Assembly: GCA_020536535.1 (NCBI GenBank)
Contig: JAHLWZ010000892.1
Span: 1 to 57,648 of the forward strand
Direction of reading: 5' to 3'
Source: Pelomyxa schiedti
Lineage: Eukaryota; Protista; Evosea
DNA: 57,648 bases
Positions 45,653-55,151 of the stretch are shown one piece after another (within the stretch, counting starts at the first letter, position 1; each line of letters begins with the position of its first letter). The notes beneath the pieces were generated by a model. The model was not told the origin of the DNA and ran no database searches. It saw nothing but the letters and a program-made list of their open reading frames with translations. A program made the position numbers and the translations under genes.

Positions 45653-47242
45653 GCAACAAGTTCAGGAGGAGCAAAAAGAGCAGTCTACATTGGCAGGTGA
45701 TGCTGATGCAGGAGGAGAAGCTGAAAAGGATACAGGAAAGGACAAGGAGCACAACGGCAGCGCCAATTCGGACACTGCTTTATTGTTAGCCTCTTTTTTT
45801 TTTTTGCCTCTCGCCCTTTGTTGTCTATTGTTAACTCACTTCACAACAGGGATCAAATTTCTACCCTAAAGCAGGAGAATGACGACCTTAAGGTTCAGTT
45901 GGCTGCTGCTCGTGCAGAGATAGAGAAGATGCGGGCAACTTGCCGTTGTTCACAATCTACTGCTGAGAATAAACCACCTGCATCAAGCACATCACCACCC
46001 AAACGCTACGACTCCTTGAAGCCCCCCGTTGTAGAAACAGTGGGGCGACCAAGTTGTCCAGTCACCTTTGTCCCCCCTCTCCCCTTGCAAATGCTACCAA
46101 TGACAATACCCACGGTGACTCTCACGCCGGCCGCATCTGATGGCAGTGGTACCACAAAAACTGTACCCCTTGACATTGCCGCAAGCTGTAACTCTTCTCC
46201 AAGTTCACAATCACGTTGTGATGGGCTACTTCCACCGGCAGTCCAACAAAGTCCACGATTCCTGTCACAAGAACCAACTACCCCAACGTCACGAAACTCC
46301 TTCAACTCCCCACGAGATGATTCCACAACACCCCCGTTGTCTCCAAGTGGTTTCAGTAGGAAAGCGCGCCAGAGTGTACGGCGTATGCTGTTACTGTCCC
46401 TGCACACTCTTTCCATTCCGCCTGATGAAACTGATCCCGGTTTGTCAACAGCAACTCGTCTCAAAGAACAAGTGGGATCGTGTCTCTCGCAAAATTCGAT
46501 AAGCCCTGCCACATTTCGCCAGATTGCTGATGTAGCCAGTCGGAACGAGGTTCCAAATCACGATTCGACAGACAACTCTAACGAGAGTAATGCCTCTGCC
46601 AACGGCAGCAGTTCCACTAATAGTGATAACACACCAACAATTACCATTAATCCACCTGTAAGCAACAGTCCAAACTCTAAACTACTAAACAGCAACTCCG
46701 GAGGGCTTAACAGTTGCCCTTTCAACTACCCTGCTGGCCTTCCGGCAATTCCCAACATCCACTCGCATTACGCACACCCGACTTTACCTGCACTCAATCT
46801 CCCCAAGACAACCATTTCTCCTCCCCCAAACAACATGTTCACAAACAACTTGAAAAATATGTATAGCAACAACATCCCGGAACCACACTCCGTGCATCCC
46901 CTTGCCCCACTTAAAACACACACCCACACAGACAAAGCAGACTACCCTTCCCTTACCAGCCACAAAGGCCCAGTAAGGCTTGAAAAGCTTTCTGTGCCTA
47001 GAGCAACACAACAATACAAAACCGCGTATCCGGCAACCACTACAAAGAATTCACATCCAGGCACATCAGCACTGCCTGGCCATTCTGATAGGACCACTGG
47101 TTCCTATCAACGAGGTGGCAAAGTGGGCATAACAGTGCGTACTCTTAATGGCAATGCATATACCCTATCTATATATATTTCCTCTCCCACAGTCATTCCA
47201 GTCCCACTAACTTTTCGACAGAACCCACGTACTGTACCATGA
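45126..47242 (+). CDS. Hypothetical low-complexity protein (poly-Q, coiled coil, long S/T/P/N-rich region); start uncertain
   Basis: Two long ORFs (247 and 474 aa) probably joined by a short intron near 45786-45850; coiled coil DQISTLKQENDDLKVQLAAARAEIEKMR. Confidence 0.55.
45134..45173 (+). repeat. Right copy of the ~40-bp inverted repeat (partner at 42941-42979)
   Basis: accaacaccctccgctgaacttgaatcgtcaaggccaata. Confidence 0.9.
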
Positions 47243-48264: not shown

Positions 48265-51200
48265 ATGGACGTAGCCATACCTCAGGGTTTCACATCTATG
48301 AGTTCGTCTTACGACGTTACGAACGGACCCCTTCTGGAGGAGTTCCGTTTCGTTCCCCCACAAAATCGGCAAAACAAACAGCACAACCCCATTTCCGCAG
48401 TGCCTCAGGCTTCATACCCTTCGATGCCTCTCCCGCAGCCCACAATGCAACCTCCGCCGCAATTGCCTGTTGTAATGCCACCCCAGAACGCCGTTGATTC
48501 GCAGCAGCTGCAACAGTTTCAGCAGTTGCAACAACTGCAGCGCCTCTTGCAACAGCAGCAGCGTCAACAGCAACAAGAGCAAGAACAACAGCAACTACCA
48601 CCACAACAGAACGTTCAACCTCTACAACTACACGAAACCCCACAACCGTCATTTATGTTCCAACCACAAATTCAATCGCAGTCACAAATGCAACAACCTT
48701 TACAAATACGCCAAGGACAGCAGCAAAATTTGCTTCTTCTTCAACAACAGCAGGCCTTGTTGCAACAGCAGCAACAATCCATCATACAGCAACAGGCTTT
48801 TTCACAGCAACAAGTAAATACACCGAACCCTTCTGCACATCAGAAAAGCCTGCTGCAACATTTACAAGCACAGCAAAGTGTGACTACCCCGTCACCCTCT
48901 CCATCCAATCCAGCTCCTGTCTCAACACCAGCCACACCCGCCCCTACTCCCATCAATCCCACTTCCGTGCCCTCTGCCCCGACTTCAAATACTGGATCTG
49001 GGGTGAAGCCTCGCAAGAAGCTGTGGGTTTGCACATACCCTCTGTGCACAAATACTAGTCCCAAGACGTACTACAATTGCTATTCTCACGTGTGGGATGC
49101 TCACGTGAGACACGAGCTAGCTGGTGCAACAGAACCTGGGACACCTGCCAATTGTGTGAGGCAAATTCTCCTGTTTTTATTCTAACATACCTTTCTGGTA
49201 AGTGCTCAGTGCTCTCGTATATAAAAAACTGGAAGACAGAGATGCTGTCAAGCATCTATGTGTTAGATATATTGCAGAAATTCCTGACCGTAAGCGTTTT
49301 GAAACCATTGCTCTATTTCACAAAAAAAAGTTGATGTTGCTGGTGGACCTACTGCCAAGAAACGCAAACACGTTCACCCACACCAAAACGTTGTGGTACC
49401 AAATTCTTTACCATGTACGGACCCCTTTAAATGTTCTCTGTTGCACTAATTATTTTCCCAGTTTTACCCAATGCAGTGCAGCCCTGCCCTGTTTCAGGTG
49501 AGTTCTATCCCCAGTACAGCCCATACGTCGACAATGTGTGTCTTTTCCACAGAGATTTCTTCTAACTTGTGTTGAAAGACCTTTTCCCTGTCACAACCGC
49601 ACTTCAACACACCTCCCGTTGACACTATGGGAAAACAAATGCAGCCTTGCAACTTTCACCCACTCAGTGCTACAATGTCCAATGGAAATACTCCTTTACC
49701 TACTCCAACTACCGTTACAACAACCACTACAACTACAACAGACTGTTCTGCAACACCAGCACAAAAGAGTCTTCCTTTGACTCCAGTAGTTACACTGCCA
49801 CTGACCATGCCTTTGAAGCAAAAAACTTCTGCAGAGCACCCAGTTGTGGAGATCCCAATAATTCCAAATGTTCATAAATCCAGTCCCTCCAGTGGGGACG
49901 GTGACAATCCCACAGATGGGAGCCCAAATGGTACTTCGTCACACAGTACCCCATCTGCCGCTCCTTCTCTTCCACAGTCCCCCAATGGGAACAATGGTGA
50001 GTAACAATTTTAAAGTGCTACCCCTTATCTACTCTAGAAGTAGAACTTTCTGTGCTCCCAAGGGACAAGTCTCCGACTATTAGAACGCAAGGTAACGTGT
50101 TCTAGTCTTTTCTCTCTTTAATATCCTTTAGATCCAAATTACCCTGTCGATGAAAATGAGTTCATGAAAATCGTGTCACTTACTGAAAGCTTGCGTAGAC
50201 TTCATGTTTGTGGTGAGGTAAGTCTCCATACAAAGATTTGATAAATCCTTATTGTGATAGATTTTTGCTGAAAATGGCTTTTTGCAAAGATCTGATGCAC
50301 GGTTTAAGCACAACATACAGCCTTTGCAAGTATATTTTTATTTACTCCTTTGGCTCGGTAAACATTTCTTGCAGGGTGCTCTTGACAAAGTTATGACAAT
50401 TGCAGGCAAGTCTTTTCAGTATAAAGACGACCCTGCTGTTAAACTAGGATTTATTGCTCAGGAGCTGAAGCAAGTGGTTCCAGAGGTAATTATTACGTAC
50501 CTTTCTTCTTCTATTGACCGTCACTAGGTAGTACGTGAAGACACTGAGGGTCTCAGTGTTGATGTGGTTGGGCTTGTTCCTTTGATTGTTGAAGCCCTTA
50601 AAGAATTGCATACATCTACCAAAGATGCACGAGTAGATCAATTTCTTGATTTACATCGAGCGGTATAATCCTGACAAACAAAAAAAAGGGAGAAAAATTA
50701 AAACCCTTCAGACAGAGGATGCACTTTCTAAAGTGAGAGAACTTGAGGCCCAGATTTCTGTAATGAAACAGAACAGCGGTAACTATATTGATAGTGGTAT
50801 CTTTTCACTCAACTTCCGGTTTTTTTTTTTAAATGTTTTATAGATCGCACTTTAATGCTGAAGTATTCAGTGCCTCGTCGAAACACGATTCACTACGATG
50901 CAACATTTGGCCCGCCTTTCCTAGTGTTTATGTTATTGGTGATCTTCACTGTTGGAGGAATAATTCTTCCTTTTGTGCTGCCCAGTCTTCCCTTTGTCTG
51001 GGCTTATTGTTGGCTGGCGGTTTTACTTATGGGTGCTAGCTTGTGGAAACAACGGAGAGAAGTTATTGACATGGTTTACCTCTTCTGTTTCAATTTTTCG
51101 TTTAATCTTAGGAAAAGGTTAAGTACAAGGAAATTAAATTGTACTGGTATCCGTCACATACCATCAATATGTTTCTGTTATCGCTAGTGGCTCTCACAGG

Positions 51201-52229
51201 TCTCACTTTATCAACAGTCATGGGTACTGTCCCAATAAAGGTACGTTCTCTTTTTTTTTTTGTTGACGACTCACTCTCACAGGTCGTTGGTATATTCTTG
51301 GCAGGACTACTTGTTTTTTGGGGCTTCTCTATTGTTGCCCACAAGAAATTTGATGTTTCTTTCCATGGTAATTTGTTCCAGTTCCTTAACCTTTTGACCC
51401 TTTTTAGCCATCTTCGTGGTTCTATTCAGTGGAATAACAGCCGCTGCTCTTGGCTACGTTTTGTTGTTCCTTATTCAACGTAAACTACTCATTTATCTAC
51501 TTTTCCTAAACCAAACACAGCATACGAATGCTTTTTCAGTGGCTATGACCACAATTTCGAGTACTATGTTCAACTAGGAGAACCTGTGGGACCTTTACCC
51601 CTTTCGGCACTGCCATGGAACTGTCCCTCTTATACTTTCCAGATAATAACTCCTTTGCCTGCCAATATTTCTATGCACAATGTATGACTTTATTTCCTAT
51701 TTCTTTCTAATTTGGCCAGAGTGGGGTTCGTGATGTACCTCCTTACCTTGCTGGCGAAGTTGGCTCTCTGTTTGATACCCAGACAAGTGATGTTTATCTT
51801 GTGTGTGCCGATGTTGTAAAATTTTTCTGTGGGGGAATTACGTTCAAAGGTATTCAAACCCCTCACCTTCCCACAACTCACATAGAAAAAGCTTGTGTGG
51901 ACCGAGATGACAGATCATCATGTGAAGCAAATGGGTGTGGGTGGTGTTCTACGAGTACCAGTGATGTAGAGCAAGGATATTGTGGGGACTGTGACGGTGA
52001 TTTCATTTCTACTTGCGAGAGTCTACCCCAAGGAGGAAGTTCAAGTAAAGGTCCGTATATTGTTGCACAAAGCCAGAACGCTCCTCACCAAACTACAGAC
52101 GGAACGACCTACAGCACTGCCGCTTGCTCCACAGCAGCTCTACAACGGCAAGCCAGCAACGACGGGAGTTCCTTCACTCCCTTACGCAGTGCTATGCTTA
52201 TCACCCTGCTTCTCCTGTGTGTTGTGTAG
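48265..52229 (+). CDS. Q-rich / C2H2-like finger / peptidase S74 (intramolecular chaperone autoprocessing) / coiled coil / 5 TM / Cys-rich ectodomain protein
   Basis: One continuous GT-AG spliced frame: CTYPLC-x13-HVWDAH; AKKRKH; LHVCGEIFAENGFLQR-SDARFKHNIQPL..ALDKV....GKSFQYK...LGFIAQELKQVVPEVV....GLSVD..GLVPLIVEALKEL; five hydrophobic helices; CEANGCGWC; hydrophobic C-terminal tail. Confidence 0.85.
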
Positions 52230-52373: not shown

Positions 52374-53015
52374 ATGGACCCAGGAAGACAGAAGCAGCTC
52401 ATGTTCATGAAAGGGGCACTCGCCATCAAGATGGAGAGGAGCACGGCGGACGTGAACATGAGCAACGTCAACCACACGAGGGAGACCATCACCGCGCCCG
52501 AAGGCAGCGGCACCGGCGGCGGCGAGCCTGGCAACGTCGCCACGGTGCGGTTCTGGAGGTGCCGCGACAGCGAGTTCGAGATCGCGGCGGTGTGCTCGCG
52601 CATCACGGTCGACGACTGCAGCGACTGCACCATCGCGGTCGGCCGCAAGGTCCTGTCGGCCGTCGTGGAGGTCAACCACTGCGAGGGCCTGCGGATGCGC
52701 TTCGACGTGCCCGTCGGCACGCTGCAGGTGGACAACAGCCCCAGCGTGTCGCTGACGTTCGCCGACGCGTCGATGTTTGGCAACCTGGTGTGGGCCAACG
52801 CCGCCAACGTCGTGGTGACGTTCGAGGGCTCGCAGCCCGACAGGCTGCAGACCGGCACCAACTTTGTGGAGCTCGAGGAGGGCGCCGACATGGGCGTGTG
52901 CCAGTTCTCGGTCAAGTACGTCGACGGCGCCTTCGTCACCGACGAGCTCGTGCGGATCCCCGGCGGGTTCCCGACTAGCCTCAAAGATGTAAGAACCAAC
53001 AACACAAGCGAATGA
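52374..53015 (+). CDS. C-CAP/cofactor C-like beta-helix protein (stand-alone CAP C-terminal-like domain)
   Basis: Intronless 213-aa ORF with ITVDDCSDCTI...VLSAVVEVNHCEGL...GTLQVDNSPSVSL beta-helix repeats; QFSVKYVDGAFVTDELVR. Confidence 0.75.
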   Translation: MDPGRQKQLMFMKGALAIKMERSTADVNMSNVNHTRETITAPEGSGTGGGEPGNVATVRFWRCRDSEFEIAAVCSRITVDDCSDCTIAVGRKVLSAVVEVNHCEGLRMRFDVPVGTLQVDNSPSVSLTFADASMFGNLVWANAANVVVTFEGSQPDRLQTGTNFVELEEGADMGVCQFSVKYVDGAFVTDELVRIPGGFPTSLKDVRTNNTSE

Positions 53016-53235: not shown

Positions 53236-55151
53236 ATGATCGACGAGAAGGCCGGGGCACACGGCGTCAGGCGTGGTGATAGTGATGGTGATTATGGCGC
53301 CGTTAAGAGAAACCACGAGGGTGGGGCCGCGGTTGTAGTTGATGCTGGTGGTGGTGATGGAGGTGTCAGTCCTTCCTCTGGTTCTCGCGAGACCGACGGC
53401 GGCGGCGCCACGCCAAAGGTTGGTCTTGTTTCTTCTGGCCCAATGGTTGCCGTTGATGTGGATGCGCCTATTCCGGCAAAACTGCCTGTGGCGTGCAACA
53501 ACAGGTTTTTTTTTTTTAATCGGGATGTGGGATACGTTTTGTTGTTTGCCCTGTGGGTTCACGTGATTGGAGTGTTTTTTTTATTTTTATTTGTTTATTT
53601 TTTTTATCGGGATTCGGAAGTATGTTGTGTGGCCCTGTGATTCCGTAATTGGGCTTTTTTTTTTATTTTATCTTTTAATTTAACAGGAGGATTACAGGGT
53701 GGTGAGGTTTTTGAGGGCTTGGATTGCAAAGCCTGGAAGAAGGCCTGAAGTGGCTCTTCATTTGTGCAGCTTTGCTTTCTTTCTGGTATTTACTGCAGAG
53801 AGCGTGGTCCTCGGCTTTAGCTCTAGTATTATTGGTGGCTTGCTTGGGTATTGGAATGTTGCAATTCTTTACATGGTTTTCAGGTTCTCCTTCAAGTGTC
53901 ATTTCTTTCCTTAACATAAAAAAAGTATAACTTCCCTTTTTTTGGCGTTACCTGTAATTACCTGGCTTGGCCCAATCAAAGGAATGATGATAGCATCAAT
54001 CACCTACGTGCTATATTGTGTAGCAAATGCATTTCCACAATGGGCTACCCTTCTCCCAGCAGGAATACTCATAGGAGCGGGGGCCTCTGTTCTGTGGGGC
54101 TCCCAGGGAATATACCTCACAGCAGCAGCTACTGCTTATTGCAAAGAGCGTAATATGCCTTCCACAGATGCCGTTCTTGGGAGGTATTTTGGTGTATTTT
54201 TTGGGTACACACTTCTCAGCTGGGTGCCAGGCAATATAATGGCTTCCCTCATTATGATGAGTGGCAAGGACTCCGATGTATCGGTTTCATCACAGTCTTC
54301 TTCTGATACATCAAGTAATAATGCGCAATACACATTGACCGTTCTTTTACTGGCTGGAGTTTGCGCAGTAGGGACCATAGCCTTACTCTTTTTGCCACGA
54401 TTCGATTATGGCACTCTTGGAAAAACCATGAAGCAACAGCTAGTTGGCGCAATCATGATGATGAAGAATAGAACTTTCTGCATCTTGATTCCTTACTTCC
54501 TTTCTCTTGGCTGCCACACCGCATTTGTGTTAGGAGAGTTCACAAATTGCTTCCTCTCGCCATCTCTTGGAGCTGATATGATTGGATTTGCCATGGCAGT
54601 GTTTGGAATGAGCTGCGGAATAAGTGCCATTGTTTCTGGGATGGTAATGGACCATTTTGGACCTTTGGTGGCCGGCACTCTCATTTGGTTTATTTCATGT
54701 TCAGGGTGCTGCATTTATTTCCTTGTAGGATTAATGGTGTGGCACTTCTAGCCTCTTTTCCTCACCTAATCACTACATCGAATTCCAGGTTCCATCCATT
54801 GGAATTTTCACTTCATTAAAATGGGTTATGTTTGCCTGCGCTGCTATTCTCGGGACATCCTTATCATCCCGCTTTGTGCAGAGAAATATCCTCACGTCCA
54901 TGCTTTTCAGATCCTGTCTGGATGACTGCCTTGTAGGCCAGCGATCGTGGGAAGCCTTTGGCTACGTGGTGATTTTTGCCATAGGACCCTTTGTCAGTCC
55001 CCTCCTGAAAACATGGATGCAGCTGGGCATCACCATTGTTGCCGCAACAAGTGTTCTCTGTGTGAGATGGATTCCATTCTTTGGGGGGGTGATCAGGACA
55101 CCATCAGAAATGAGGCAACCCTCAGCAGTGAAGCTGCTTCCTTTGTCCTGA
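53236..55151 (+). CDS. UNC-93-like MFS membrane protein
   Basis: FAFFLVFTA, LG.....ILY, LGP..MMI...YVLY..AN, GILIGAGASVLWGSQGIYLT, GRYFGVF, GN; many TM helices. Confidence 0.85.

What the first reader, a model, noticed from the sequence alone, without database searches (positions are those of the whole stretch)
48265..52229. Candidate new class of membrane-tethered, self-cleaving transcription factor (zinc finger + S74 chaperone + 5TM + ectodomain)
Seen: one spliced frame carries, in order, a long Q/P-rich N-terminus, a C2H2-like finger (C-x4-C-x13-H-x4-H, ~49030-49105), a basic NLS-like AKKRKH (49354-49371), an S/T/P linker, then LHVCGEIFAENGFLQR|SDARFK (Ser codon 50291, Lys codon 50306) with GFIAQE, a coiled coil, five TM helices, a Cys-rich domain and a hydrophobic tail. 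Known: the S-D-x-R-x-K Ser/Lys dyad is the peptidase S74 autocleavage site of phage tailspike chaperones and of MYRF/MrfA, where it trimerises the protein and releases an N-terminal NDT80 DNA-binding domain from a membrane anchor. Here I see no NDT80 domain. Inference: an independently assembled membrane-to-nucleus system releasing a trimeric zinc-finger factor, possibly gated by the ectodomain. An odd TM count puts the N-terminus in the cytosol and the Cys-rich part outside, which fits.
Basis: partly seen in the sequence, partly recalled or inferred. Interest (0 to 1): 0.9.

Follow-up and report, generated by a model that had tools for sequence, protein, structure and literature searches.

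The report
Amoeba self-cleaving membrane zinc-finger factor
Anaerobic amoebae, including the human parasite Entamoeba histolytica (eight copies), share an undescribed membrane protein that joins a zinc-finger module to a phage-type self-cutting domain and five membrane helices, so it probably cuts a gene regulator loose from the membrane the way the myelin factor MYRF does, but with different parts.

Summary
The locus is one gene of Pelomyxa schiedti (KAH3744971, mis-named 'BspA leucine-rich repeat protein'); my 19-exon model reproduces the public protein exactly. It carries a C2H2 finger with a conserved helical extension, an unconserved linker, a short stalk, a peptidase S74 Ser/Lys autocleavage site, a coil, five TM helices, a cadherin-like Ig domain and a small Cys knot; no NDT80 domain. 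The same architecture recurs in Mastigamoeba, gut amoebae from metagenomes and Entamoeba (8 paralogues each in E. histolytica and E. invadens; EHI_006740 is intronless, so finger and S74 are one polypeptide). Ser and Lys are kept in 34/34 members, four zinc ligands in 35/35, and the base-reading helix positions are nearly invariant. The finger profile matches SWI5 finger 1 (E 2e-6). I found no paper on the family, and the scan had not noted it. Best reading: a MYRF-like, self-releasing, membrane-tethered transcription factor with a different DNA-binding module. Cleavage, nuclear entry, DNA binding and ectodomain gating are inferred. The AKKRKH signal and the hydrophobic tail are not conserved, and independent origin from MrfA is unresolved.

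The parts
48265..52229 (+). Whole gene, 19 exons and 18 introns (38-49 nt); public model KAH3744971.1 starts at ATG 48424, first in-frame ATG is 48265
   Evidence: (spliced model identical to P0001)
48265..49005 (+). Q/P-rich low-complexity N-terminus, not conserved (33% Q; absent in Entamoeba)
49006..49288 (+). Finger domain, about 78 aa, split by intron 49154-49202: basic lead-in (KPRKK), C2H2 finger, two further helices and a returning strand
   Evidence: 43% mean identity to relatives
49030..49104 (+). C2H2 core C-x4-C-x13-H-x4-H (x12 in 33 of 35 members)
   Evidence: (SWI5 finger 1, E 2.4e-6; YY1, E 0.005)
49354..49371 (+). AKKRKH, NLS-like; not conserved in Entamoeba
49372..50154 (+). 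P/T/S-rich linker, 6% mean identity to relatives; no room for an NDT80 fold
50155..50290 (+). Conserved ~31-aa stalk before the scissile bond, ending in Arg (P1); most conserved region (57%)
50291..50536 (+). Peptidase S74 intramolecular chaperone domain; catalytic Ser codon 50291, Lys codon 50306; GFIAQE motif
50537..50783 (+). C-terminal S74 motif (phage/bacterial type, no MYRF_ICA match) and predicted coiled-coil helix
   Evidence: coil is inferred from sequence pattern
50915..51475 (+). Five transmembrane helices; basic loops 2-3 and 4-5 cytosolic
51476..51893 (+). Lumenal/extracellular cadherin-like Ig beta-sandwich with PWNC motif and conserved Cys
   Evidence: SraP cadherin-like domain Z 9.0, rmsd 2.7, 86 aligned
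51894..52007 (+). Small Cys-rich knot, PSI-like pattern (weak)
   Evidence: (PSI E 0.34)
52167..52226 (+). Hydrophobic C-terminal tail, GPI-signal-like; present in some gut-amoeba relatives, absent in Entamoeba and Mastigamoeba
   Evidence: GPI reading is inference

Best explanation
A membrane-tethered transcription factor that frees itself. The protein is inserted by five TM helices with its N-terminal half in the cytosol and an Ig-like domain outside (predicted). The S74 domain and coil trimerise three chains, and the Ser/Lys dyad cuts the Arg|Ser bond (inferred from MYRF, MrfA and phage tailspikes). The released fragment (finger domain + linker + short stalk; 176-629 aa across the family) stays trimeric through the stalk, enters the nucleus and binds DNA with three single C2H2 fingers, each helped by a basic lead-in and a helical extension (inferred). 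Whether cutting is constitutive, as in MrfA, or controlled through the 5TM/ectodomain part, as partners control animal MYRF, is open.
For: One polypeptide: intronless 2079-nt gene in E. histolytica, intronless 3111-nt gene in a gut amoeba, exact match of my model to the public protein. Ser, Asp, Lys 34/34 and Arg 32/34 at the S-D-x-R-x-K site. Only the finger domain, stalk/S74 and membrane part are conserved; the linker is not. Zinc ligands 35/35; helix positions -1 Thr 34/35, +2 Tyr/Phe 35/35, +3 Asn 35/35, +6 Ser 30/35, Lys at -2 32/35, the positions that read bases in classical fingers (established knowledge). Profile hits SWI5 finger 1 E 2.4e-6 and YY1 E 0.005; best structural rows are zinc-finger proteins (weak). 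Positive-inside topology. Same order as MYRF/MrfA, where dyad mutants block release (PMC3828593, PMC3742443, PMC8326128). All full-length hits with this finger carry S74.
Against: No experiment on any member. A single C2H2 finger can also bind RNA or protein; the classical core Phe is replaced by P/L/V/A; no Pfam zinc-finger hit; structural Z only 3.3. No conserved NLS in the linker. The stalk is shorter than MYRF's and only its last ~17 residues resemble the beta-helix pattern, so a stable released trimer is uncertain. No transcript or proteome data seen.
Confidence: 0.68

Rival explanations
1. It self-cleaves as above, but the released finger fragment is not a DNA-binding transcription factor: it binds RNA or a conserved protein partner in the cytosol or nucleus.
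For: Single finger with atypical core and a unique helical extension; no conserved NLS or activation region; single C2H2 fingers often serve other roles (general knowledge).
Against: Invariance sits on the base-reading face of the helix with a basic lead-in; closest solved sequences are DNA-binding fingers.
Confidence: 0.15
2. The main product is the membrane half: S74 assembles a trimeric 5TM receptor, adhesin or channel with a cadherin-like ectodomain, and cleavage removes an N-terminal pro-region or inhibitor.
For: The 5TM bundle (26%) and Ig domain (34%) are conserved far more than a mere tether needs; MrfA manages with one TM helix (PMC3828593).
Against: The finger domain (43%) is more conserved than the membrane half; in all characterised S74 proteins the N-terminal product is the effector.
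Confidence: 0.09
3. S74 acts only as a trimerisation scaffold; the protein stays whole and works at the membrane (for example the nuclear envelope or ER), tethering nucleic acid through its fingers.
For: Arg at P1 differs from the Pro of MYRF/MrfA (PMC3828593).
Against: Ser and Lys invariant in 34/34 proteins as low as 26-33% identical overall; P1 varies freely among prokaryotic S74 domains.
Confidence: 0.07
4. Gene-model artefact: finger and S74 parts belong to separate genes.
For: No RNA reads examined here; fused models do occur in these annotations (Yip1 fusion in the Mastigamoeba model, BspA fusion in one E. histolytica strain).
Against: Intronless orthologues and the same order in more than 30 proteins.
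Confidence: 0.01

Closest known systems
MYRF / Dictyostelium MrfA / C. elegans MYRF-1 (PMC3742443, PMC3828593, PMC8326128)
   Same: N-terminal cytosolic DNA-binding candidate, flexible linker, stalk, S74 Ser/Lys autocleavage site, coil, membrane anchor, lumenal domain, in the same order.
   Different: C2H2 finger domain instead of NDT80; five TM helices instead of one; cadherin-like ectodomain; no MYRF_ICA (PF13887) match; Arg instead of Pro before the Ser; stalk lacks the GKVGINT rung. True MrfA-type genes exist separately in this genome (five NDT80 loci).
Phage and bacterial tailspike intramolecular chaperones (Pfam PF13884, endoNF type)
   Same: S-D-x-R-x-K dyad, GFIAQE motif, compact C-terminal motif; nearest non-family sequence hits are prokaryotic tail-fibre-like proteins (E 2e-10).
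   Different: Eukaryotic nuclear gene with introns; chaperone is internal and followed by a polytopic membrane anchor; payload is a zinc-finger domain, not a long beta-helix.
Single or extended C2H2 fingers (SWI5 finger 1, PDB 1ncs; GAGA factor and SUPERMAN from memory)
   Same: C-x4-C-x12-H core; Tyr+2, Asn+3, Ser+6 shared with SWI5 finger 1; basic flank.
   Different: One finger only, core Phe missing, invariant Trp-Asp after the first His and a C-terminal helical extension with no Pfam or fold match.
Other membrane-bound transcription factors (SREBP, ATF6; screen in PMC13294678)
   Same: Latent regulator held on a membrane until proteolysis.
   Different: Those need separate proteases; the 2026 screen mentions neither Entamoeba, S74 nor C2H2.

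Membership tests
Peptidase S74 intramolecular chaperone | PF13884 above gathering score | tested here: met
   60.3 bits vs cut-off 22, E 2.3e-16
Peptidase S74 intramolecular chaperone | Ser/Lys dyad in S-D-x-R-x-K | tested here: met
   Ser 50291, Lys 50306; 34/34 family members
Peptidase S74 intramolecular chaperone | Trimerisation and autocleavage | not testable with these tools
   Only monomer prediction available; no experiment
MYRF/MrfA | NDT80/PhoG DNA-binding domain | tested here: not met
   No hit in protein or relatives; genome hits lie at other loci; linker unconserved
MYRF/MrfA | MYRF_ICA C-terminal motif (PF13887) | tested here: not met
   Hits five NDT80 loci of the genome, not this one
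MYRF/MrfA | Single TM helix, type II | tested here: not met
   Five helices; N-in orientation is shared
MYRF/MrfA | Beta-helical stalk before the cleavage site | tested here: inconclusive
   Last ~17 residues in register with MrfA-type and prokaryotic stalks; upstream rung differs
MYRF/MrfA | Common descent of the S74 domain | tested here: inconclusive
   Separate groups in the careful tree, but one joint clade is not rejected; long branch, 119 columns
Classical C2H2 zinc finger | C-x2-4-C-x12-H-x3-5-H ligands | tested here: met
   35/35; x12 in 33, x13 in 2 including this gene
Classical C2H2 zinc finger | Beta-hairpin/helix fold and homology to solved fingers | tested here: met
   SWI5 E 2.4e-6; AF2 pLDDT 87, zinc-finger chains rank first but Z only 3.3
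Classical C2H2 zinc finger | Core Phe and Leu | tested here: not met
   Phe site is P/L/V/A, Leu site mostly Cys; no Pfam zf-C2H2 hit
Classical C2H2 zinc finger | Zinc binding and sequence-specific DNA binding | not testable with these tools
   Inferred from conservation pattern only
BspA leucine-rich repeat proteins (public name) | LRR_5 repeats | tested here: not met
   Only PF13884 found; name most likely traces to a fused 1208-aa model EMS16349.1

The most novel reading that the evidence does not exclude
A one-chain receptor-transcription factor: the cadherin-like ectodomain and 5TM bundle sense an outside cue and gate S74 self-cleavage, releasing a trimeric zinc-finger factor; built independently of MYRF/MrfA from a bacterial S74 domain in the Archamoebae ancestor and expanded to eight paralogues in Entamoeba as an unrecognised environment-to-nucleus signalling family.
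Probability: 0.22. Interest if true: 0.92.

Novelty: new variant of a known kind. Interest (0 to 1): 0.76.

Why it matters
The S74 self-release mechanism is described in eukaryotes only for the NDT80-bearing MYRF/MrfA family (papers held). This family shows the module coupled to an unrelated DNA-binding candidate and a polytopic, receptor-like anchor, which makes S74 release a portable design rather than a MYRF peculiarity. It also names eight uncharacterised candidate transcription factors in E. histolytica and eight in E. invadens, organisms with few known regulators and working genetics, so cleavage, localisation and targets are directly testable. The finger-plus-helix domain has no Pfam family.

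Tried and rejected
The joined spliced model was not sent to any search tool: searches went exon by exon by reference until a tool returned the public protein P0001; the joined model was used only inside scripts. Exact look-up of a neighbouring gene found nothing. No finger relatives in JGI metagenome or IMG/VR contigs. Atlas search of the last exon gave only sub-0.8 hits; of the finger, unnamed and zf-C2H2 clusters at 0.91-0.92, a lead only. PDB sequence searches of the S74 exon and ectodomain were blank. A weak finger-like hit on contig C140 is not a paralogue. An apparent 650-fold cyst induction of 'EIN_253270' in PMC4053983 was rejected: that table's locus is about 915 bp against a 737-aa protein, and its EIN_252860 carries Ras-family domains, so the identifiers belong to another annotation version. 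Eighteen locus tags or accessions appear in no paper's main text; six E. histolytica tags are absent from the supplements of a gene-regulatory-network paper. My first exon model read through two in-frame introns and was corrected. The S74 tree cannot settle origin.

Full report
Source and gene model. The window is contig C892 of a 52.4-Mb, 5337-contig assembly; the encoded protein is on record as KAH3744971.1 of Pelomyxa schiedti. I built the gene from the raw sequence and then reconciled it with the public protein: 19 exons and 18 GT-AG introns of 38-49 nt give a translation identical to the 1007-aa record from ATG 48424, or 1060 aa from the first in-frame ATG at 48265.

Observation. Peptidase S74 matches two consecutive exons and the whole protein at E 2.3e-16. 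Nothing else in Pfam matches. NDT80 and MYRF_ICA models hit other loci of this genome but not this one; four of those loci were read and are ordinary MrfA-type genes with NDT80, a GKVGINT stalk, S74 and one TM helix. The public name 'leucine rich repeat protein, BspA family' is wrong and probably comes from a fused E. histolytica model.

Family. A search of 1.84 billion representatives with one TM exon returned the protein itself and two Entamoeba proteins with the complete architecture. Further searches gave more than 30 members: E. histolytica EHI_006740, 027790, 149030, 153210, 122890, 112040, 194560, 178450; eight in E. invadens; E. dispar, E. nuttalli, E. marina; Mastigamoeba balamuthi m51a1_g14821; and unnamed amoeba-like contigs from metagenomes. 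Every complete member has the finger domain, the dyad and the TM block; one apparent exception had the finger in the frame just upstream of its gene call. EHI_006740 is intronless, which settles that finger and S74 are one chain. P. schiedti has a single copy. No named member lies outside Archamoebae; the searches are word-indexed and length-limited, so this range is a lower bound.

Finger domain. About 75 residues: a basic lead-in, W-x-C-x4-C-x12-H-x-W-x2-H, then a Y-K-K helix, a second helix and a strand (pLDDT 87). The four ligands are present in 35/35; helix positions -1, +2, +3 and +6 are Thr 34/35, Tyr/Phe 35/35, Asn 35/35, Ser 30/35. In classical fingers these positions contact bases (established knowledge). 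The profile finds SWI5 finger 1 at E 2.4e-6 and YY1 at 0.005; fold searches rank zinc-finger proteins first but weakly (AFV1p06 Z 3.3; ZNF704 TM 0.53). The core Phe of classical fingers is missing and Pfam has no model. So it is a C2H2-type finger in a new extended domain; DNA binding is likely but untested.

Cleavage module. Ser, Asp and Lys are invariant in 34 members, Arg in 32, with Arg at P1. The 31 residues before the Ser are the best conserved part (57%); the last 17 are in register with MrfA-type and prokaryotic stalks. In MYRF the dyad is essential for cleavage and the stalk keeps the released fragment trimeric (PMC8326128); MrfA cleavage is constitutive (PMC3828593), whereas C. elegans MYRF cleavage is gated by its juxtamembrane region and a partner (PMC12803276). 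Both options remain for this family.

Membrane half. AF2 on 25 sequences gives five long helices, a beta-sandwich and a small Cys knot (pLDDT 86). Lys+Arg averages 4.7 and 2.2 in loops 2-3 and 4-5 against 0.5 and 0.1 in loops 1-2 and 3-4, which places the N-terminus in the cytosol and the sandwich outside. The sandwich matches cadherin-like Ig domains (SraP Z 9.0), a common fold that shows no function. The hydrophobic tail is GPI-signal-like and lineage-restricted; the Q-rich N-terminus and AKKRKH are also not conserved.

Origin. Nearest outside hits are prokaryotic S74 proteins, and the family lacks the MYRF-type insert and motif. But in trees of 119 columns a joint clade with the Pelomyxa MrfA-type domains is not rejected, and that branch is long (no animal or dictyostelid MYRF rows were available). 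Independent assembly and a domain swap from a shared ancestor are both possible.

Literature. No held paper names any of 18 locus tags or accessions or combines Entamoeba with S74 or MYRF; a 2026 screen for membrane-bound regulators does not cover it; the Mastigamoeba genome paper does not mention it; no earlier scan finding. Subscription literature is not searched.

Verdict. Shown: a real, conserved, undescribed Archamoebae family with finger domain, intact S74 dyad, five TM helices and an Ig-like ectodomain. Inferred: trimerisation, self-cleavage, nuclear entry, DNA binding (0.68). Speculative: ligand gating and independent origin (0.22 together). It works like MYRF/MrfA but fails three membership tests for that family, so it is a new variant of a known kind; interest 0.76, raised by the eight-gene expansion in a genetically tractable human parasite.

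Noticed in passing
G000:C63, L015 minus strand 6226 to about 4700: A second non-NDT80 S74 gene in P. schiedti: a different C-x4-C-x12-H-x3-H finger, a basic NLS-like stretch, S/T linker, SDSRRK dyad (PF13884 E 2.9e-6) and a coil; followed by a locally repeated ~160-aa segment ending in a hydrophobic helix. Assembly gaps and duplications; unrelated to the family described here by profile. May be a second finger-S74 fusion or part of a repeat element.
   Followed up: partly
G000:C163, C663, C579, C858, C676 (L014, L017-L020): P. schiedti has about five canonical MrfA-type NDT80 + S74 genes; C858 was missed by the NDT80 model and C676 by the S74 model but both show the other markers.
   Followed up: partly
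P0047 (Mastigamoeba m51a1_g14821) and P0100 (EMS16349.1): Both public models look like fusions with neighbouring genes (Yip1 at the N-terminus; BspA repeats), the latter explaining the wrong name of the Pelomyxa protein.
   Followed up: partly
window 52374-53015 +: Intronless GC-rich (59%) gene for a stand-alone CAP_C/TBCC-like beta-helix protein, 213 aa.
   Followed up: no
window 53236-55151 +: UNC-93-like membrane protein gene (PF05978 E 5.8e-13).
   Followed up: no
window 45818-47242 +: 474-aa S/P/T-rich open frame with a short N-terminal coiled-coil-like stretch and no Pfam match, ending 1 kb upstream of the gene.
   Followed up: no
P0068 (Saprolegnia SPRG_22275): An oomycete protein joining EGF-like domains to an S74 domain that groups with prokaryotic S74 sequences.
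   Followed up: no
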